In this document: in pieces, positions 10,674 through 19,763 of the stretch
Numbering within the stretch: the first letter of the stretch is position 1
Layout of the letters: every line of letters starts with the position of its first letter
NCBI RefSeq assembly: GCF_003704095.1
Contig: NW_020846747.1
Coordinates: 372,001-436,000, forward strand
Length of the DNA: 64,000 nt
Direction of reading: 5' to 3'
From: Pocillopora damicornis
Lineage: Eukaryota
Program-made: the position numbers and the translations under genes
The notes under the pieces: generated by a model
What the model saw: the letters and a program-made list of their open reading frames with translations, nothing else
Told to the model about the DNA's origin: nothing
Database searches by the model: none

Positions 10674-11656
10674 ATTGCGCTGAAATGATCAGGTGAAGTA
10701 TCACTGATCTGAATGTTAACAATTCATTCGAGAACTACAGGCCGCACGACCGCCATCACTACGCTCTTTACTCGTTCTCATTCTTCTTTGCAGTGTGCGA
10801 GGATGCTAAGCTTCTGGCATGAATTGAAGGTACGTAACGCGTGCAAAAACAGGCAATTATGGTACTGGAAATTTCTCAACAGTACAATTAAAGAAGACTC
10901 AATTGATTAATCTCGGGGCTGTCTAAATTAAGGAAACGTGCAAAGTAGAGTGCTTTCTAACACGGTATTTCAAAACTGTTAAAAAAGATAAAATAAAAAT
11001 ACAAATTGGAGTATTAATTACAGGGCTGTAAGCCACCATTTAAAATAAGACATTAATATTCACATTATAGGACCAATGAAATAATCTGATCCACCATCCT
11101 TTTACATCCTCATATCAGTATGCATATTCTCCATACTGTTCTCTACTGATTTCCTTGGGTACTGACAGAGAGAATTTAATTTTCAAACAATCAGAAGCTT
11201 CTTTAGTTGAGATGATCATTTGCCTTATCCTCTTGACCTTAATGTGGTATTGAGGGGTGATACTCTGGGAAGAAATTAAATGCCAGCGACCCTTAGGGTT
11301 TAAAGGGCTTAAATGAGATAATGCCTCAATAGATATTTTTCAGGTGCTTGTTCCTTTCCTGCCATAATTTGTTCCAGTTGCGCATACAGAAACAAATCCA
11401 CACAAAATATAAGATGACTTTTATTCTAGTTTTATTCACTTCTCCTTCCTACAGGAAGTAACTTTTAATTAGTTAGCATATTCACTTTACTTTTTTGTTC
11501 AATATTATAAATACAGAAAATTTTCAGGAAATACTTCCCAAAATTGTTTATAATTTACTCTAAAAAGCTTATTTTACTTGCCAAAAAAAATCAAGGCATT
11601 TTTCTGACAACAAAATAAACTTTGGTGGGCTTATCAAGAAATGCTTTTTTGGAAAA

Positions 11657-14600
11657 TCACAGCTCAGAGTGTGTTGATTCTCTGTGAATGGAATCCAAGC
11701 TATCTGATGGTAGTTGTGTTTGTTTCATGATCTCTTTATCTTCAGCCAATTCTTTTTCATAGAAAATTCCTGAAAGAAAGAAAAAATCTGACATCATTAA
11801 ATGACACTTCACCTTGGAAAAGCATTTCAGAGGGTGGATCTCTCCAAAAAATGAGAGATGACATTGTGTTTTCCATTAATTTTTTTTTCTGACTCAAACA
11901 AATAAAGGAAAGGTTTTTATTGTCAAATTTTTTTTATAGTTGCCTTGAAAGCCCCCTTATTACTGATTTTTGTAAGGGCACTCTTATTACTCCTTATAAT
12001 TAGGTTCAAACAAATTTTCAAGTCTTCGTGGTCATATGATGAAATGATTATTGACTGAAGTTGATTGGGCCTGACAGTGACATTTTAGCTTTTTGTTGAA
12101 AAAGTGCAAACTTCACTGCAGCCCTCCCACTAAGTCAATGAGTACATATTTGGGAGTGCTTATTGATTGAGTGTCTTAAAACCTAAACCATTGAAGTAAT
12201 AGTCAACTGTCAATCAGAAAAAAGGAAAATAACCTAAGGAGCCAATGACAACTCAAAGTAAAAACAAGCTTACAACTGAAAGCATGGGAAAACGGGCCAA
12301 GTTGTCATTGATTTTAGTTTTGCATCTGATAGGTTGAGCAAATTGAGTAACTTTTCTGGACCAATCACAGTGTAGAGTCAGGCAAAACTGATGCCATCAC
12401 CGGTTACTTTTGACACTCAAAGAAAGTCACTTTAAAGTTTTGTGTGTTTTTCAAACCTGATTTGTCATCATCTTTCTTTTTCAAATAAAGCTTCAAGACA
12501 TGGTCAAGACGCTCCCTCAGTTCTTCTTCTGACACAAAATCTGCATTTTTAGGCTGAAGCATGTTGTAAAGTTCCTTCGCTACTTTAGCAGAGCCACCAA
12601 AATCCTAGAGGATAAAAAATAGCCATGAATCGTGACTAACATGAACACAGAACATAATTAGTGGCTGGTATGTCAGCTGATGATGTCTGTGGCTGACAAA
12701 TTGTCTAAACATTATTTATATAATTGTCTGAAAAGCTCTAAGGTAAATGTGAAATTTGGAGGAACAAGATTTCTGAACAAATTACATAGGGCAAAGTGAA
12801 GCAACCCAGTCGAAAATTGCTATATTTGTAAGTGCCTTAGTTCTTGGACCCCTTTTCTAGTAACAATTTTTCTGCAGGTGTCATGTTAATTACCTCGTAA
12901 CGTGCTATCAAGTTGTCCTTTGTCAGTTTTCCATGTCCATCTTGCAAAGCTTGGTTAAAAACAGACCTGAAAAGAGGAAAAAAATAAAACGCTTGTGAGA
13001 ATTCTGGATTTAGGGGATGGTAGAAAACAGGAGACCAAGAAAAAATTTCAGAGGAAGGACTGGAACCAACAAGAGACATATCTCACAAATGACGTCAGCC
13101 TGGAAACCAACCAAGGGCACCACAGTGAGGGGCAAGTAAGAGGGTGAGAGGGGAGGGGGGGGCAGGTTTTTCCACAGGTATCCATTATTGCCCCACCTCT
13201 GACATAAAATTAGTCTCTTCTTCACCAAATTCTAAAAACTATTGTCAAAAAAGAAAAAAATACTGTGGCATTAAAGTAGCAAGAATCGTTCCATGTCTCT
13301 TACTTGACTTCCTTCAGATCAAAAACAGCAAATTCATATTCCTCAGTGTTTGCAGGGTCTGGATCAATCTCATTTGCCACTTGTTTCACTTGTTCTATTG
13401 TAAGGGCCTCGATGTCTTGTTTGGTGACATAACCTTTGTTTTCAGCATCCATTATTTTAAGAACCTTCAAAGGTAAAATAAACAAAGTATTTTTCATTTG
13501 ACACGTCAAACCTAGTCTAAGACTTCTTCAAGGTTTTACTTCAATCACTTCTCTTTGTGATTGGTCTAAAAAGCTTATGCCACTTTCTCAAGCAATAGAG
13601 ACATTTTCAATTGAGTATCACAACTCTTTTCCGCTGGGTGGTTGTTACAATTACTTTTTTTTTGAATTGAAAAGAGTTCCTTAATAAAAGTTTACTTTGA
13701 TTGGTATTAAAACATAAAAAAATTGGGGAAACTTGGAGGCCATAAGACAAGTATATCAATCTACAATAACACACAATTTTAAAGTGCATACAATCTCTCT
13801 TCTCTTTAGAATTATAATTTTGTGTCTTTTAATTGTAGTTGTACCATTTACTGTTAACTTATTTTCACTCATTCACCTCCTTAATTACTTAAATCATATA
13901 AAATTTTTGAACTTTTTACTTCAATCACTTCACTGTGATTGGTTTAAAAAGCTTACACCACTTTCTCAACCAATAGAGACATTTTCAATGAGTATTGCAA
14001 CTCCTTTCCTCAGGTTGGTTGTTGTGATCACTTTGGTTTTCAATTGAAAAGAAATCTTAAACAAAAGTTTTCTTTGTTTGGTATTAAAACTCAATACAGT
14101 GTAGGAAACTGGGGAACTTGGAGACCACGAGACAAGAACATCAATGATCCACAGTTACTGTACACAGTTTTAAGTGCACAGAATCTCTCTTCTCTTACAT
14201 TAGAATCTACGCCTTTTAATTGTACATAATTATACTTTTAATGTTAACTTGTTTTCACTCATTCCCCTCCCTACTTAAATAATAAATAAAATTTCAACTT
14301 TTTGCCAGTTGCCTGCTGTTGTTGGCCCATGTCATCATAAATTACTAACTTACTTTTTCAGCGATGTTTCTTCTAACATCTTCATGTTCTTCCATAACTT
14401 CACCCTGCAAGAACAGCAAAAGTAAGTCATAGCACAGGCAGACCACACTATGTGTCTGTGTCTATCGTTGACAAGAGACAAACAAAATCTATGAGAGTTA
14501 TGAATACAGCTCTGAAAATTGCATATCTAAATCATATCTATGTCTGAATATCTCACTAAAATTAAATGAAATGATAATTGATGCATTTGTGGTATTTTTT

Positions 14601-17600
14601 TTCCTTCACGGGCCATTTTAAGTGTTTTACAACAAAATTACTCTTAGCCAGAGGCTGTAAAGAGAAGAAAGGGAGTCTCCCTTTCTGCTCTTAACTTGAG
14701 GTAATAGAGTCTGCTCTGGAGCAAAGTGGCCCACCCAGCTGGGGTTTATCCTGATTTCCTTGGCATGAAGCAACAAGGAGGAAGAGCGCTACTCCCCCCC
14801 TGAATGGAATGCCAGTCCATCACAAGGTTATCCCTTAGCATTTCATCAGGCTTTGAATTCCCTGACAATTTGCTGGTAAAAAGTACCCATTTTCATTATA
14901 TGACAAGGTAGCCTTAGGTAAATCTAAGCATTCTTGCTTGGTCTGGATTTTTCCATATGGACCGTTTCCACTGAAATTTCATGAGCCACAAATTTCTGTC
15001 TTCTGTCTCCAAAATAAACAAGTTTGTCTGAATGCTGGAGTCATACTAGGAAATGTTGGCCCTTGATCATATTTGTACAGACCTGGCTGTCCTGGGTCTA
15101 TACTGCCATGACTTTGGGTCAATATTCCCCAGTACAGCCCTGATGCCTGATTAGTAAGAATTTAATACTCCTGAGTGGAGAGAGACACTGTGAAATTAAA
15201 GTGTCATGCTTAAGAACACAACAAAATGACCTGGCCCGATCTCAAACCCAGACTTCTTGACCTGGATTCCAGCACAGTAATCACTGTGTCATCATGTCTC
15301 CCACAAAGGCTACAGTGGTATCATACATGTATTATTCAAATCAAAAATCCCTCACAGGATGCTTAATTATTGTAGGATCACACATACTCATGTATAGGTT
15401 TCCTTACTTCAGTAAGTAGTTGAAAAAAGTCCTCTATGTCCAGTCTCTTACTTTTCTTACTTTCCACAAAACTGATATAATGATCTCTATAACAAATTAA
15501 ACAAAGATGAAATCAACAGTGATCCAAAGGATCATAATATTATTTATTCATGTAATTTCAATTGGAAAAGGAACTTATCCTAGAATATGCTCTGACAAAG
15601 GGCTAATGCTCAAAACATCAGCTTTGAAACTCTTTAACCCTTTAACTCCCAGATCAAACTTGTCATTCTCCTTATTGTCAACCATACAATTCTTATAATG
15701 TTAGTTCAGAGAGTATTGGATCAACTGATTATCTCCAAATTGATATTTTTCTCGATTCTCATCATTTATCTGGTTGATATTGTATTGATATTGTAAGGAG
15801 AAATTCTGTCTTCATCACTCATGGGAGTTAAAGGGTTAAAGTGGCCTATTTACATTATCAACTCAGTTGATACTATTAAATTACCCTGGCTGTTTCTTTA
15901 GAAACTTACCCCCTTTATCTGAGAATTGGCCAAATGAGGACACATGGAAAACTTTTAACTTGATTGCATATACCAATTAAAAAAGGATCACTTTGGTTTT
16001 GTTTAATTTGGATACTGTAAAAATAAATAAGATCCCACTCATTTTTAGGAGATAAAGGGTTAACTTTCCAATAAAAAGTTGCTTAAGGGTCTGTGCAAAC
16101 TTTGCACAACACCTGGGACATTTTACCTGATGTGAATAGTTCCCAGTCTTGCATGTAATCTGATCAAACAACATGGTGTCCAGATTAACTTGGCCACAGC
16201 TTCTATTTCTTATTTATCTTCTACTTTCAATTATTATAGTTGTTACCCCTATACCCTCTAGTATTGAATAATTCATGTAATACGTACTTCATTTCAAATG
16301 GATCTAAGTTCCCCATGGTTTGTGGGCCATATCCTGGGTAGGTCCATACCATGTTCACATCAGACAGGGGTGTGTACTCTAGCTTGGCACTCTCACATCC
16401 AATAGGGTCAAACTCTGTCAGGCGTGAGAACAGAACTGAAACAGCCATGTTCTTGGAGCCATATGATCGCACTTGATGCCAGTAACCTGATATAAATTAT
16501 AAAACATCCATCTTTAGTTAATAATGGTAGGCTTTGAAATAGCTGCAGACATTTGTAGGCACTAACTAATACACTGATAGAGCATAATGTTTCAGAAACT
16601 ATCTAATACATGCATGTACTCTGTACACTTTCTTAGAATGAGGGTCCTGATCTCTTTTCATGCACAAATTTTAAAAATTTGCATGTCACATGTACTTGAA
16701 ACAGTGTTTCATAGGTCAAAAACTTCAAATCTCATCTTACATTGCCTTTATGTAAAATTCATGTGCCATGTATTAATTTTGGGATTTATCATGTGCAGAA
16801 AACATCAACCCTTTGCCCCCTTTTAAAGTGCTTAATTCTTGAGATGAAAGTTTCTCCTAAAATCTTCATGTACAAAGTCTAGATATTCATGATAATGTAT
16901 GGTAACTATTCTTAGTATCAAATGTCTATGTTAGAAATTTTAGTATTATGGGTAAAGTGAAAAATTTCAATCTTTGTAATAATTTTTTTTAATACCATCA
17001 GCATTACAAGTACATAGTATGTCAGTAATGAAAGTACAGGATGTATAACACTAATGGTTTTAAAAAAAACTGATTAAAAATACAGAAATTTTTTACTTTG
17101 GTTACATTATATGGCTAGTATTAGTAGTGCTTACTGTAAGGCAAGAACAGGCAATCTCCTGGTGTCATGTTTGCATACTGCCATCTAACTTGTTTGAATT
17201 TGGGATATTTGATAAGATTTACACTTTGAACATCCAATGTGGCAAACCCTCCATAGCCTCTGTCCCCATCAGCAACTGGTATCTGCAATCCACAAATATA
17301 ATTTAAGACATCAGATCTCTTGTGAATAGCTGCTACAACTCAAAGGCTTAACTGGGTCAAGATTGTTTTCCTTACATGGAAGCAAAGAACTTTCTTTTGC
17401 ACAAGGATAATTTTCCTAATTAAGTTGAGTACCTTGTTCTCAAGTTGAGAATTTTCTTAATACTAAAAAAATAATTTAGACCAAGACTTTCAAAGATTCT
17501 CAATTAAATAAAAGTGTCAACTTAAGAAATCTCAAGTTTCTGTAAACAGTCTAGACTTCACTTGAGAAGAAAAATCCAGTTGAAATTAACCACAACCACA

Positions 17601-18868
17601 ACTGTCCACAAGAGCTTTCCATTTTTCTTTCTCTTAACAAAGATTTGAAAAAAGTCACAAAGATTTTCAAATAACATTTTGTCATCACTAAAGATTGTGA
17701 ATCAATTAAAGAAATAGTGGACTACGCGTTTTAAAGAAACAATTTATAAGTAAATTATTCAACGAAAAAACACCTGTTTCATACAGGTAAATAACAGTGG
17801 TTATTTACCACGTTTTGTTCACCAAGCTTAGCAATTATTTACGCAGCGGACCTTTTGCTAAATGCGGAAGCTTAGTAAATAGTTCATACGAATTTAAAAA
17901 TTGAGCGATCTAAAATCTAAAGAACTTATCATGTTAATTGCTATCAGATTTCAAATACTTCATTACCATGGCAAAGGTTCGTATTTTAAAAAGTCTGAAT
18001 TAGTTTCTAAGGTAAATTTGACGACAAAGTGTTTTTCTGAAGGCGTCAATGACAAGGTGATGACTTTTTGAGATGCAGATCTCAATACAAAAGGTCTAGG
18101 AATTGAAGATTAGAACAAGGAAGCATGAAAAATTTCCAACTTTGAACGAAGTGACAAATTTCAATTCAAGAGAGCTTTCTTTGTCAAGAAAAATTATTTG
18201 AAGCCATCTTTTCATCAAAAAACGAAATAAAGATTTCAAAATAATTCTTATCTGCAAGATCGTACGTTTTGTTCGTTTTCTGGGTGAATGAGTATCCAGT
18301 CTTTGGTGCCATTGAGCAAGCAATTAATGGCATTGTCTGCATCTTTGTGCAACATACTGCGAGTTCCGCCCGAACTCAACCAAAGATTTGCTTCTAAAAT
18401 TCTCTCACTGAAAGAACCACACATCAGGGAGGGTAACACGAAAACTTCTGTTGACAACGGATCTGGCAGCTGAGACACGGTATAGGAATCTTTCTGTTGA
18501 TAAGTTTCCAGAAAACTACGAATCGTGTCACGACCAAGACCCCTTTCTCCAACAGGAACATGATCTTTCTCGCGTTTAGCCTCCAGTTTAACTTCTAACT
18601 CGCCATAATTGTCTTTTAAATATTGATCAGTCCATAAATGGAAAGCAGGAAATTTTTTAGCTGCTCCGCGAAAAACAACAGGTTTTCGCAAACTTGCATA
18701 TTGGTTCCAAAACTCCTGAGGCGATGGAAGTTGTTGTAAAATCTCTACATGCCCATCGCTGTCTCTGTGTTTGCCAAGTTCTTCTCCATGACCGCGAGGA
18801 AGTTCTTGGTGGTTGGCAGAAGTTAGGGCTCGTTCCAGGATAGACAAAACAAATAAGAAAATCTTCAT
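11657..18868 (-). CDS. Secretory-pathway JmjC (cupin-like, JMJD7/KDM8/FIH-related) Fe(II)/2OG oxygenase with C-terminal EF-hand-like motifs and HSEL terminus, 9 exons, ~524 aa
   Basis: Exons 18266-18868, 17135-17282, 16288-16486, 15408-15486, 14354-14404, 13304-13464, 12894-12966, 12457-12604, 11657-11769 (1575 nt, phase-consistent). N-terminus MKIFLFVLSILERALTSA. JmjC motifs KPVVFRGAA, NLWLSSGGTRSMLHKDADNAINCLLNGTKDW and PGDCLFLPYSYWHQVRS. EF-like loop DAENKGYVTKQD. Ends THSEL*. Confidence 0.9.
12165..12430. mobile_element. CCAAT-rich non-autonomous interspersed element (MITE-like), CpG-decayed copy
   Basis: Shares ggagccaatga.aactcaaagtaaaaacaagc...ttttagttttgcatctgat.ggttgag...ttttctggaccaatcacag with the many copies listed under 26325-26570. 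Confidence 0.7.
13520..14300. repeat. Local tandem duplication of ~390 bp in a JmjC-gene intron
   Basis: 13520-13900 and 13915-14300 share successive blocks: ttttacttcaatcactt, gtgattggt.taaaaagctta, caatagagacattttcaat, ggtattaaaac, ggggaa.cttggag, cacacaa/gttttaagtgca, aatctctcttctct, gttaactt.ttttcactcatt. Confidence 0.8.
14700..15305 (-). mobile_element. tRNA-derived SINE (minus) interrupted by a nested ~270 bp element at ~14893-15165
   Basis: SINE sequence gtacccattt|atactcctg.gtggagagag is split by an unrelated insert. The flanks match the reverse complement of 6545-6850. Confidence 0.7.
15590..15920 (+). mobile_element. Penelope-like/retrozyme-type fragment with decayed hammerhead-like core, split by a piggyBac MITE (15634-15839)
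   Basis: ctgacaaagggctaatgctcaaaacatcagctttgaaactct[MITE]gtggcctatttacattatcaactcagttgat...gaaacttaccccctttat. An uninterrupted homolog lies at 31471-31623. Confidence 0.6.
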
Positions 18869-19006
18869 GTTGAAAGTGTACTGCTTAATTGTTTTGAGAT
18901 TCTGTGTGAACGAGAGAGCCCGGTTTTGAGCATGGAGATGAGGCCTGCAGTTGGTAAAATATGACCAATTGTCTTGGACTGGATTCACGGATGTATGGTG
19001 AGATAA

Positions 19007-19763
19007 AGTGAAAACCTGCGTATAAGGACCTATTTTTTTTTTAAGTTAGGTGCACAATTAACAAAGTTAAGTCTGGTAAAGTAGGTTCTTGTATTTTGGG
19101 CCCCTATTGGCGATTTAGGCTGAATAGGTTCTTAATTAAGTTCTTTATTGTAAATTGGGGTAGGCAGGCTTACCCGACTCCGTGGTGTGTCCAGTTTTCT
19201 CTACACTTGTTGCAAATGTTAATAGGCCCACACGACTCCACAGTAGGTTCCTGAGTGACTATGGAGAGATTGAGGCAGAATGGATTGGTGCCCATTACAA
19301 CGGAGGACAGGGTTAATGACTTGAAATCCGAGTGGATTACAGACTACCATTTCAAATGTCAGAAAAAAACCAGATTTAACTTTGTTAATGTGCACCTGAC
19401 TGAAAAGGCAAAATTTTAGACTGTTACACCGCAAGAATGGATACAATACATTGTAAACCTCTTTTATCCAAAGTCCATGAAGATAATAAAAACTTGACAT
19501 TAACTTGTTTTTGTTGTAGGGATTAGTACTTTCATTTGCAATTACAGTTTGCTACACTATGTTGTTGTTATACTCAAATTTGCAATCTGAAAGTTTCACT
19601 CCTCGGTTAAAATGTTTTTCATGATATAACTGTAACTCAAAATATAAGAACCTGCTTGATCTTGCTTGACTAAATGTAGGTTCTTGTATTTTAGGGTATG
19701 AAGGAGGCATTTCTGCCAGGATGTTTTTAATCCACTAAGTTGTTCTACGCGGGTTTAAACTGT
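19007..19763. mobile_element. Tc1/pogo-like MITE (~750 bp) between the divergent JmjC and Kv genes
   Basis: Imperfect TIRs agtgaaaacctgcgtataag / ttctacgcgggtttaaactgta. Internal repeated gtaggttcttgtatttt motif at 19081 and 19676. Confidence 0.55.

What the first reader, a model, noticed from the sequence alone, without database searches (positions are those of the whole stretch)
11657..18868. Probable ER-lumenal JmjC hydroxylase fused to EF-hand-like motifs with a KDEL-like HSEL tail
Seen: the spliced protein starts with a hydrophobic signal-peptide-like segment. It has an intact Fe-binding H-x-D...H triad (LHKD, YWHQV) and the 2OG-binding Lys (NGTKDW). Four helix-loop-helix segments follow (VESKKSKRLDIED, DAENKGYVTKQD, QDGHGKLTKDN, QPKNADFVSEEE), and the protein ends in THSEL*. 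Known: JmjC-only hydroxylases (FIH, JMJD5, JMJD7) are cytosolic or nuclear. The characterised ER 2OG enzymes (P4H, PLOD, ASPH, and P4HTM, which carries EF-hands) belong to other subfamilies; JMJD8 is the ER-targeted JmjC exception. Inference: a Ca2+- and O2-sensitive secretory-pathway protein hydroxylase of a poorly characterised invertebrate family, possibly modifying matrix, skeletal or nematocyst proteins. The ORF track shows none of the C-terminal features.
Basis: partly seen in the sequence, partly recalled or inferred. Interest (0 to 1): 0.8.

Follow-up and report, generated by a model that had tools for sequence, protein, structure and literature searches.

The report
ER-resident JMJD5-like hydroxylase with EF-hand domain
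This coral gene encodes an apparently active iron/2-oxoglutarate protein hydroxylase that is predicted to stay in the endoplasmic reticulum; it belongs to an untested animal enzyme family first listed in 2010, and its calcium-binding motifs look degenerate in this species.

Summary
A nine-exon, all GT-AG, minus-strand gene (11657-18868) encodes 524 aa. The product is letter-for-letter the database record "hypothetical protein pdam_00003363 [Pocillopora damicornis]". RNA contigs from four studies join exons 2-9 exactly, including the HSEL exon.

The protein has a hydrophobic N-terminus and a Cupin_8/JmjC domain closest to JMJD5 (Z 24.7). All Fe/2OG ligands are invariant in 43 orthologs, as are four cysteines. 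A C-terminal domain of four helix-loop-helix units matches EF-hand proteins. The tail is HSEL.

42 of 43 orthologs and 12 of 15 paralogs end in [KRH]xEL or a close variant. This points to ER retrieval rather than secretion.

The family is not new. Iyer et al. 2010 (PMC2938197) named it the "secreted JMJD5-like family": GHxxxhG motif, conserved cysteines, lost in vertebrates, arthropods and nematodes. That paper's main text does not mention EF-hands, KDEL-type tails or the ER.

It is not JMJD8, which has HxH and sits in another clade.

Ca2+ sensing is weakly supported here. No EF loop in any of the seven hexacoral orthologs fits the canonical pattern, whereas 14 of 43 orthologs elsewhere keep one.

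The substrate is unknown. JMJD5's arginine-binding Glu is invariant, which hints at a basic residue.

The parts
18266..18868 (-). Exon 1 (codons 1-201). Holds the start ATG at 18868, the signal-peptide-like segment, the GHxxxLG motif, and the first half of the JmjC domain with H174, D176 and K189.
   Evidence: Pfam Cupin_8 E 2.2e-18 on this exon alone.
18815..18868 (-). Residues 1-18: hydrophobic N-terminal segment, the predicted signal peptide, with small residues T-S-A before N19.
   Evidence: Kyte-Doolittle 9-residue maximum 3.27. AF2 predicts a helix at 2-18. No other hydrophobic 19-residue window exceeds 1.15. All 43 orthologs have a hydrophobic N-terminus. SignalP was not available.
18773..18793 (-). 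G26-H27-G-E-E-L31-G32: the family-specific N-terminal GHxxxhG motif.
   Evidence: G32 is invariant; G26, H27 and L31 are at least 90% conserved. The motif is named in PMC2938197.
18341..18349 (-). H174-K-D176, the HxD iron ligands.
   Evidence: They align to JMJD5 H321/D323.
18302..18304 (-). K189, the lysine that binds the 2OG C5-carboxylate, inside the N186-G-T sequon.
   Evidence: Invariant. Aligns to JMJD5 K336 (PMC5862942).
17135..17282 (-). Exon 2 (codons 202-250 plus 1 nt), JmjC domain. Includes the N239-M-T sequon and C245.
   Evidence: Cupin_8 E 2.4e-05. RNA joint 16486/17135 seen in 4 runs.
16288..16486 (-). Exon 3. Holds H254 (codon 16476-16478), the end of the double-stranded beta-helix, and C281.
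   Evidence: RNA joints on both sides.
15408..15486 (-). Exon 4: first helix-loop-helix (EF1; loop residues 325-336 at 15429-15464), non-canonical.
   Evidence: AF2 helices H313-326 and H334-343 with a beta bridge at 331-332. RNA uses the acceptor at 15486 rather than the in-frame one 15 nt downstream.
14354..14404 (-). Exon 5 (17 codons): acidic linker leading into the entering helix of EF2.
13304..13464 (-). Exon 6. Holds EF2 (loop 366-377 at 13414-13449; Lys at loop position 5) and the conserved D-P-A-N-T-E-E-Y-E motif (396-404 at 13333-13359; N399 and E404 invariant).
   Evidence: Weak Pfam EF-hand hits on this exon, E 0.055-0.19.
12894..12966 (-). Exon 7: EF3 (loop 421-432 at 12912-12947), non-canonical.
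12457..12604 (-). Exon 8: EF4 (loop 455-466 at 12521-12556). Degenerate here, but canonical in 11 of 43 orthologs.
11657..11769 (-). Exon 9: last helix, a disordered tail, the C-terminal H-S-E-L (11660-11671) and the TGA stop (11657-11659).
   Evidence: RNA joint 11769/12457 in 4 runs, with contigs running on past the stop to the edge of the laid stretch. Tail conservation.

Best explanation
The gene encodes a soluble Fe(II)/2-oxoglutarate-dependent JmjC protein hydroxylase of the animal 'secreted JMJD5-like' family. [quoted passage not shown]

Shown here: the exon structure and its splicing in RNA; the JmjC fold, closest to JMJD5; invariance of every Fe and 2OG ligand; four invariant cysteines; a C-terminal domain with the fold of two EF-hand pairs; and a C-terminal HxEL tail conserved across the family.

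Inferred mechanism. The N-terminal segment directs the protein into the ER and is probably cleaved near A18/N19. The four cysteines probably form disulfides there. The HSEL tail is recognised by the KDEL receptor, so escaped protein is brought back from the Golgi. In the ER the enzyme uses O2 and 2OG to hydroxylate a side chain on proteins passing through the secretory pathway.

The target is most likely a basic residue. The family keeps JMJD5's arginine-binding Glu (E96) and JMJD5's unusual three-residue 2OG carboxylate clamp (K189, Y129, S171).

The EF-hand domain packs against the catalytic domain. In this coral it is probably a structural or substrate-binding module, or at most a low-affinity Ca2+ site, because its loops have lost the canonical ligands.
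For: Gene model: all introns are GT-AG, and the product is identical to P0077. Seven of eight introns are confirmed by RNA contigs from 4 studies.

Catalytic domain: Pfam Cupin_8 E 4.7e-35. The AF2 model has pLDDT 91.1 and pTM 0.87. JMJD5 is the best structural match (Foldseek E 4e-17, TM 0.83-0.86 on the target; VIA Z 24.7, rmsd 2.2 A over 225 residues). JMJD5 is also the best profile match (E 5e-26, against JMJD7 6e-19, TYW5 3e-9 and FIH 4e-7).

Active site: H174, D176, H254, K189, Y129, S171, W163, V256 and E96 are invariant in 43 orthologs. In the pairwise alignment they fall on JMJD5 H321, D323, H400, K336, Y272, S318, W310, V402 and E238. Those JMJD5 roles are taken from PMC5862942.

ER residence: all 43 orthologs have a hydrophobic N-terminus, and 42 of 43 end in [KRH]xEL, HDEF, HDDL or HEDL. 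12 of 15 more distant paralogs end likewise. [quoted passage not shown] A KDEL-receptor gene is present in this genome. The protein has exactly four cysteines, each invariant in 43/43, two partly conserved N-glycosylation sequons, and no transmembrane segment.

EF-hand domain: the model shows four helix-loop-helix units with paired loop beta-bridges. 20 of 43 orthologs hit Pfam EF-hand_6 (best 4e-8) and 17 of 43 hit EF-hand_7 (best 2e-9). The family profile hits solved NCS-1 at E 1.2e-5 over positions 403-473. A domain-only model of a 78%-identical ortholog finds EF-hand proteins almost exclusively: Foldseek top 50 at prob 0.89-1.0, and VIA best Z 7.3 to the EF-hand pair of FKBP22/FKBP14.

Family identity: the GHxxxLG motif, the conserved cysteines, JMJD5-likeness and the taxon range all match the description in PMC2938197.
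Against: No localisation, activity or Ca2+-binding experiment exists for any family member that I could find.

SignalP and DeepLoc were not available, and the hydrophobic core is short (about 9 residues, followed by E-R).

HSEL itself has not been tested. Only the HXEL class has.

Iyer et al. predicted an extracellular or cell-surface role.

The basic-residue guess rests on one conserved Glu. JMJD5's Y243 aligns with E100 here.

The structural matches of the EF-hand domain are modest: Foldseek E 1e-3 to 3e-2, and Z below 8, a level the tool says can reflect a common helical arrangement.

Disulfide pairing and the position of the EF domain relative to the active site could not be read, because model coordinates are not exposed.

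The 5' end of the mRNA was not checked with reads.
Confidence: 0.72

Rival explanations
1. One reading: the EF-hand domain makes this coral enzyme a Ca2+-gated hydroxylase that couples ER Ca2+ and O2 to protein hydroxylation, in the way proposed for P4H-TM.
For: The EF-hand fold is present and appears to be held rigidly against the catalytic domain (pTM 0.87). 14 of 43 orthologs keep a canonical loop: EF4 in 11 and EF2 in 3. P4H-TM is a precedent, with an EF domain next to the active site and a Ca2+ affinity in the ER range (PMC7948501). ER Ca2+ is high, so a weak site could still be occupied.
Against: In this protein, loop positions 1/3/5/12 read E/K/S/D (EF1), D/E/K/D (EF2), L/D/H/N (EF3) and Q/K/A/E (EF4). 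None fits the canonical pattern. All seven hexacoral orthologs share these losses, including a conserved Lys at position 5 of EF2. Pfam EF-hand scores for this protein are 17-18 bits against cut-offs of 25-30.
Confidence: 0.25
2. The protein is secreted and hydroxylates cell-surface or matrix proteins outside the cell, as Iyer et al. 2010 predicted. On this reading the HSEL tail is weak or non-functional.
For: This is the prediction in PMC2938197. The protein has a signal peptide, conserved cysteines and sequons, which fit any secretory protein.
Against: A [KRH]xEL-type C-terminus is kept in 42 of 43 orthologs from sponges to amphioxus, and in 12 of 15 paralogs from other subfamilies. That is hard to explain without selection for KDEL-receptor binding. 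2OG, Fe(II) and ascorbate are available in the ER, where P4H, PLOD and ASPH work (established knowledge), but are scarce outside cells.
Confidence: 0.1
3. It is a catalytically inactive ER scaffold or chaperone-like JmjC protein, as has been suggested for JMJD8.
For: JMJD8 is ER-lumenal, forms oligomers and may lack activity (PMC5684140).
Against: JMJD8's doubt rests on its HxH motif. This family keeps HxD...H and every 2OG-binding residue invariant across about 43 orthologs. Iyer et al. place JMJD8 in another clade.
Confidence: 0.05

Closest known systems
Secreted JMJD5-like family of JOR/JmjC dioxygenases (Iyer, Abhiman, de Souza & Aravind 2010, NAR 38:5261, PMC2938197)
   Same: JmjC fold closest to JMJD5. 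N-terminal GHxxxhG motif. Conserved cysteines. Entry into the secretory pathway. Animal-only range with loss in vertebrates, arthropods and nematodes. Several subfamilies with lineage-specific expansions; this coral genome has at least 12 further paralogous loci.
   Different: The protein itself does not differ; it is a typical member. The paper's main text does not mention the EF-hand domain, the [KRH]xEL tail, the ER or calcium, and it predicts action on cell-surface proteins.
Human JMJD5/KDM8, arginyl C-3 hydroxylase (PDB 6F4N and others; PMC5862942)
   Same: Best structural and profile match. Same Fe ligands, the same K/Y/S clamp on the 2OG C5-carboxylate, the same Trp and Val lining the 2OG pocket, and the arginine-binding Glu.
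   Different: JMJD5 is nuclear/cytosolic, with no signal peptide, EF-hand domain, retrieval tail or the four cysteines. Its Y243 is not conserved here. Identity is only about 25%.
JMJD8 (PMC5684140)
   Same: A JmjC-only protein with an N-terminal signal sequence, shown to be in the ER lumen.
   Different: JMJD8 has HxH instead of HxD, an apparently uncleaved signal peptide, and no reported EF-hand domain. It sits in a different JmjC clade (PMC2938197). I had no JMJD8 sequence by reference, so I did not align it directly.
P4H-TM, ER transmembrane prolyl 4-hydroxylase with an EF domain (PMC7948501)
   Same: A 2OG oxygenase in the ER combined with an EF-hand domain close to the catalytic domain.
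   Different: It belongs to a different 2OG-oxygenase subfamily (P4H, not JmjC). Its EF domain is inserted within the catalytic domain and binds Ca2+. It is membrane-anchored rather than retained by a tail.
ER-resident FKBPs such as FKBP22/FKBP14 (PDB 4MSP)
   Same: The best VIA match of the isolated C-terminal domain (Z 7.3, rmsd 3.2 A over 72 residues). The layout also matches: a lumenal enzyme domain, then an EF-hand pair, then an HxEL-type tail. The tail of FKBP14 is from my own knowledge and was not checked here.
   Different: The catalytic domain is unrelated (a peptidyl-prolyl isomerase). It has two EF-hands rather than four.

Membership tests
Secreted JMJD5-like family (PMC2938197) | JOR/JmjC double-stranded beta-helix with HxD...H, closest to JMJD5 | tested here: met
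   Cupin_8 E 4.7e-35. H174/D176/H254 are invariant. JMJD5 is the best hit by profile (5e-26) and by structure (Z 24.7).
Secreted JMJD5-like family (PMC2938197) | Unique N-terminal GHxxxhG motif | tested here: met
   G26-H27-G-E-E-L31-G32. G32 is invariant and G26/H27/L31 are at least 90% conserved in 43 orthologs. The motif is also present in the paralogs.
Secreted JMJD5-like family (PMC2938197) | Conserved cysteines that form disulfides | tested here: inconclusive
   There are exactly four Cys (150, 183, 245, 281), each conserved in 43/43 and absent at the aligned JMJD5 positions.
Secreted JMJD5-like family (PMC2938197) | N-terminal secretion signal | tested here: met
   A hydrophobic N-terminus in 43/43 and no other hydrophobic segment. 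This is a crude hydropathy test only; SignalP was not available.
Secreted JMJD5-like family (PMC2938197) | Animals only; absent from vertebrates, arthropods and nematodes | tested here: met
   The named hits among the 120 best are sponges, a placozoan, cnidarians, echinoderms, hemichordates, cephalochordates, tunicates, a brachiopod and molluscs. The limits are those of a word-based search and a list of 120.
JMJD8 | HxH in place of HxD at the iron site (PMC5684140, PMC2938197) | tested here: not met
   The motif is H174-K-D176, invariant in the family.
EF-hand domain | Paired helix-loop-helix fold | tested here: met
   Four units with loop beta-bridges in the AF2 model. The domain-only ortholog model hits EF-hand proteins almost exclusively, with modest scores. 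Profile hit to NCS-1 at E 1.2e-5.
EF-hand domain | Pfam EF-hand model above the gathering score | tested here: not met
   P0077 scores 18.2 bits on EF-hand_7 (cut-off 30) and 17.1 bits on EF-hand_6 (cut-off 25). Orthologs do pass: 20 of 43 hit EF-hand_6, best 4e-8.
EF-hand domain | Canonical 12-residue Ca2+ loop (the PROSITE PS00018-type pattern, written from memory) | tested here: not met
   No match in P0077 or in any of the 7 hexacoral orthologs. EF4 matches in 11 of 43 and EF2 in 3 of 43 orthologs elsewhere.
KDEL-receptor cargo (soluble ER residents) | Extreme C-terminus [KRH]-x-E-L on a soluble lumenal protein | tested here: met
   HSEL follows a disordered tail. 42 of 43 orthologs have the motif. 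The HXEL class is functional in carboxylesterases (PMC5818367). A KDEL-receptor gene is in this genome.
KDEL-receptor cargo (soluble ER residents) | ER localisation that depends on the tail | not testable with these tools
   Needs cell biology.
JMJD5-type arginyl C-3 hydroxylase | Arg-binding E238 and Y243 (PMC5862942) | tested here: inconclusive
   E238 aligns with the invariant E96. Y243 aligns with E100, in a loop that carries a gap.
JMJD5-type arginyl C-3 hydroxylase | Hydroxylation of a peptidyl arginine | not testable with these tools
   Needs enzyme assays and mass spectrometry.

The most novel reading that the evidence does not exclude
Non-vertebrate animals, from sponges to amphioxus, may run an undescribed ER-lumenal side-chain hydroxylation of secretory and matrix proteins, JMJD5-like and perhaps at arginine or lysine C-3. 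It would be carried out by a multigene JmjC family that vertebrates, arthropods and nematodes lost. In lineages that keep canonical EF loops (sponges, tunicates, crinoids, octocorals) the reaction would be gated by ER Ca2+.
Probability: 0.3. Interest if true: 0.75.

Novelty: new member of a known kind. Interest (0 to 1): 0.5.

Why it matters
Among JmjC proteins, experimental ER-lumen residence is so far reported only for JMJD8, which may be inactive. The known ER hydroxylases (P4H, PLOD, ASPH, P4H-TM) belong to other subfamilies.

This family looks catalytically intact. It is conserved at 45-65% identity across about 600 million years of animal evolution and is expanded in this coral. It carries a retrieval tail that moves its predicted workplace from the cell surface, as proposed in 2010, to the ER lumen.

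That gives a concrete, testable candidate for a protein modification that the main model animals cannot reveal, because they lost the genes. Nematostella, sea urchin, Ciona and amphioxus all have orthologs and are workable systems.

Tried and rejected
Exon-by-exon Pfam scan. It confirmed Cupin_8 but gave only sub-threshold EF-hand hits.

Joined model. I did not type or submit a joined model to any search tool. The exons were joined only once, inside a script, to test identity with a database record, and no sequence was printed. All whole-protein work then used that record, P0077, by id.

The look-up of encoding contigs for P0077 returned nothing; records of the window's own genome are left out. 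There is therefore no single mRNA contig of this species. I used ortholog mRNA contigs instead.

JMJD8 orthology. I rejected it on HxD versus HxH and on the clade assignment in PMC2938197. I made no direct alignment, because no JMJD8 sequence was available by reference and I would not type one from memory.

Whole-model structure searches. The JmjC domain filled the hit lists, so they say nothing about the C-terminal half. I got round this with a domain-only model of a 78%-identical ortholog.

Rfam on 11000-19500 gave no hits.

Literature. There were no papers combining JmjC, EF-hand and KDEL, none using the phrase 'secreted JMJD5-like', and none citing the locus tags.

The big all-against-all protein search and the third word search were not used.

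The search of earlier findings returned only two unrelated notes on other parts of the window.


Full report
**What is in the sequence.**
The window is eukaryotic DNA at about 36-40% G+C. Between 11657 and 18868 the minus strand carries a nine-exon gene, which I rebuilt by eye from the sequence and then checked by script.

The exons are 18868-18266, 17282-17135, 16486-16288, 15486-15408, 14404-14354, 13464-13304, 12966-12894, 12604-12457 and 11769-11657. All eight introns are GT..AG. The CDS is 1575 nt, giving 524 aa plus a stop.

A search with a Trichoplax relative then returned a database record, P0077, named "hypothetical protein pdam_00003363 [Pocillopora damicornis]", 524 aa. An in-script comparison that printed no sequence showed it to be identical to the spliced product. 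From there I used P0077 by id.

The window is contig C3382:372001-436000 of a 234-Mb assembly.

**Is it transcribed and spliced as modelled?**
Eight poly-A RNA-seq runs hold 23-34% of the sampled words of the 7.35-kb stretch. That share is about what the exons plus UTRs make up.

I laid the contigs of four RNA runs from four different studies on 11600-17599. This was the one call allowed, at most 6,000 letters. All four runs show joints at exactly the seven modelled introns between exons 2 and 9, each with CT..AC ends on the plus strand. This includes the last exon with the HSEL tail. It also shows use of the acceptor at 15486, where a second in-frame acceptor lies 15 nt downstream.

Contigs of 1417 and 1465 nt run on for 532 and 580 nt beyond exon 2, about the length of exon 1. 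That part lay outside the laid stretch, so the exon 1/2 joint and the 5' end are not directly shown.

Three things support the start codon:
- There is an in-frame stop at 19048-19046 and no in-frame ATG before 18868.
- All 43 orthologs begin with a hydrophobic segment.
- An mRNA contig of a 78%-identical ortholog carries an in-frame stop four codons upstream of its ATG.

**The catalytic domain.**
Pfam gives Cupin_8 at E 4.7e-35 over residues 50-272. An AlphaFold2 model built on 43 orthologs is confident: mean pLDDT 91.1, pTM 0.87, with only residues 510-524 disordered.

JMJD5 is the closest solved protein by every measure:
- Foldseek: E 4e-17, TM 0.83-0.86 on the target.
- VIA-align: Z 24.7, rmsd 2.2 A over 225 residues. 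This is ahead of TYW5 (22.5), JMJD7 (21.6) and FIH (20.8).
- Family profile: E 5e-26, against 6e-19 for JMJD7, 3e-9 for TYW5 and 4e-7 for FIH.

I combined the HMMER alignment to JMJD5 with the residue roles given in PMC5862942. The equivalences are as follows:

| JMJD5 residue | Role in JMJD5 | This protein |
|---|---|---|
| H321 / D323 / H400 | iron ligands | H174 / D176 / H254 |
| K336, Y272, S318 | clamp on the 2OG C5-carboxylate | K189, Y129, S171 |
| W310, V402 | line the 2OG pocket | W163, V256 |
| E238 | salt bridge to the substrate arginine | E96 |
| Y243 | cation-pi contact with the arginine | E100 (not kept) |
| L329 | lines the 2OG pocket | N182 (not kept) |

All the residues in the first four rows are invariant in the 43 orthologs. 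The enzyme therefore looks catalytically competent. It has a JMJD5-like cofactor site and an acidic substrate pocket. A basic target residue is a reasonable guess, but no more than that.

**Signs of life in the secretory pathway.**
- The N-terminus is hydrophobic: Kyte-Doolittle 9-residue maximum 3.27, and an AF2 helix at 2-18.
- No other segment approaches transmembrane hydrophobicity.
- The protein has exactly four cysteines (150, 183, 245, 281). Each is conserved in 43 of 43 orthologs and absent at the aligned JMJD5 positions.
- There are two N-glycosylation sequons, N186 (conserved in 24/43) and N239 (30/43).
- The tail is HSEL, at the end of a disordered stretch.

Across 43 full-length orthologs, 42 end in [KRH]-x-E-L or the near variants HDEF, HDDL or HEDL; the exception is a truncated model. 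Twelve of 15 more distant paralogs, at 35-40% identity, end the same way. Two of the other three are truncated.

[quoted passage not shown] This genome also encodes a KDEL receptor (PF00810, 98.9 bits).

Conservation of this tail from sponges to amphioxus is the strongest argument that these enzymes are ER residents rather than secreted proteins.

**The C-terminal domain.**
In the model, residues 313-479 form four helix-loop-helix units: 313-326/334-343, 351-365/375-379, 410-423/430-440 and 444-453/464-479. Each loop has a two-residue beta bridge, as in paired EF-hands. A long last helix follows.

For this protein, Pfam EF-hand scores are below threshold (18.2 and 17.1 bits). However, 20 of 43 orthologs hit EF-hand_6 (best 4e-8) and 17 hit EF-hand_7 (best 2e-9). 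The family profile also hits solved NCS-1 (E 1.2e-5), frequenin, neurocalcin and hippocalcin at positions 403-473, and calmodulin and troponin C (E about 0.02) at positions 304-404.

Whole-model structure searches were saturated by JmjC hits. I therefore cut the domain out of ten ortholog mRNA contigs by reference and modelled it for a 78%-identical scleractinian ortholog (pLDDT 75).
- Foldseek's listed top-ranked matches (to rank 49) are EF-hand proteins almost without exception: the SCaMC regulatory domain, calmodulin, troponin C, NCS-1, sorcin and centrin. Probabilities are 0.89-1.0, but E-values are only 1.4e-3 to 3e-2.
- VIA-align's best matches are EF-hand pairs for each lobe. The top one is the EF-hand pair of the ER protein FKBP22/FKBP14 (Z 7.3, rmsd 3.2 A over 72 residues). 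These Z values are modest.

Together with the sequence evidence, this is enough to call the domain EF-hand-type.

**Does it bind calcium?**
Probably not in the classical way in this coral. Loop positions 1/3/5/12 read as follows:

| Loop | Positions 1/3/5/12 |
|---|---|
| EF1 | E/K/S/D |
| EF2 | D/E/K/D |
| EF3 | L/D/H/N |
| EF4 | Q/K/A/E |

I applied a PROSITE-type EF-loop pattern, written from memory, to all 43 orthologs. It matches none of the seven hexacoral sequences. It does match EF4 in 11 orthologs (sponges, tunicates, crinoids, octocorals) and EF2 in 3.

The ancestral protein therefore probably bound Ca2+. Hexacorals keep the fold but have lost the ligands. A weak site in EF2 cannot be excluded at ER Ca2+ levels.

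One feature is unexplained. The segment D-P-A-N-T-E-E-Y-E (396-404) between EF2 and EF3 is highly conserved, and N399 and E404 within it are invariant.

**What family is it?**
Table 1 of Iyer, Abhiman, de Souza and Aravind (2010, PMC2938197) lists a "Secreted JMD5-like family". [quoted passage not shown]

All of these features are met here:
- The motif G26-H27-G-E-E-L31-G32 is present.
- The four cysteines are invariant.
- The protein is JMJD5-like.
- The taxon range fits.
- A tree of 58 members shows an ortholog group that tracks animal phylogeny, plus further subfamilies.
- This coral genome has at least 12 other paralogous loci.

That paper's main text does not mention EF-hands, KDEL, the ER or calcium. 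I found no later paper on the family.

It has HxH rather than HxD and sits in a different clade (PMC5684140; PMC2938197). This gene is not a JMJD8 ortholog.

Database names for orthologs are automatic and inconsistent. They include "F-box protein At5g06550-like", "Lysine-specific demethylase 8", "Calmodulin" and "JMJD7-like".

**Verdict.**

The family is not new, so I file the gene as a new member of a known kind.

Two points appear not to be in the literature I could search. First, the whole family carries an ER-retrieval tail. Second, it carries an EF-hand domain. Together these change its predicted site of action from the cell surface to the ER lumen.

The claim of Ca2+ sensing is weak for this coral. 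The suggested link to skeleton or nematocysts has no support, because sponges, placozoans and deuterostome invertebrates have orthologs.

Noticed in passing
window 15600-15999 (intron 3 of the gene): Summed RNA-contig word depth reaches about 7,000-42,000 in all four RNA runs, against about 30-80 on the exons. There are many different joints and loose ends. This looks like a copy of a highly expressed dispersed repeat or element. Rfam gives no hit.
   Followed up: partly
window 18865-18933, minus strand: An out-of-frame upstream ATG at 18933 opens a 22-codon uORF. Its TGA stop overlaps the main ATG (the bases read ATGA). Whether the mRNA 5' end includes it is unknown.
   Followed up: partly
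window 13556-14291 (intron 5) and 12329-12375 (intron 8): Intron 5 holds a tandem duplication of about 378 nt at 76-93% identity, and intron 8 holds a related inverted copy. RNA depth of about 30-58 at 12200-12399 also suggests an expressed repeat, although all four runs splice across that region.
   Followed up: partly
G000 contigs C3272, C286, C2139, C901, C3714, C2045, C788, C2556, C1165, C3244, C55, C33: There are at least 12 further loci with 25-52% identity to this protein. The closest is on C3272, at about 50%. C286 and C2139 also match part of the C-terminal domain. This points to a multigene family in this coral.
   Followed up: partly
P0087 (Stylophora pistillata ortholog record): The record carries 'GG' pairs where all other orthologs have conserved residues, for example at the HxD histidine, and an extra insert after the JmjC domain. 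This looks like a gene-model or assembly artefact rather than biology.
   Followed up: no
L009:1-24: This public Logan transcript contig starts with what looks like Illumina adapter sequence, ending 2 nt upstream of the ortholog's ATG.
   Followed up: no
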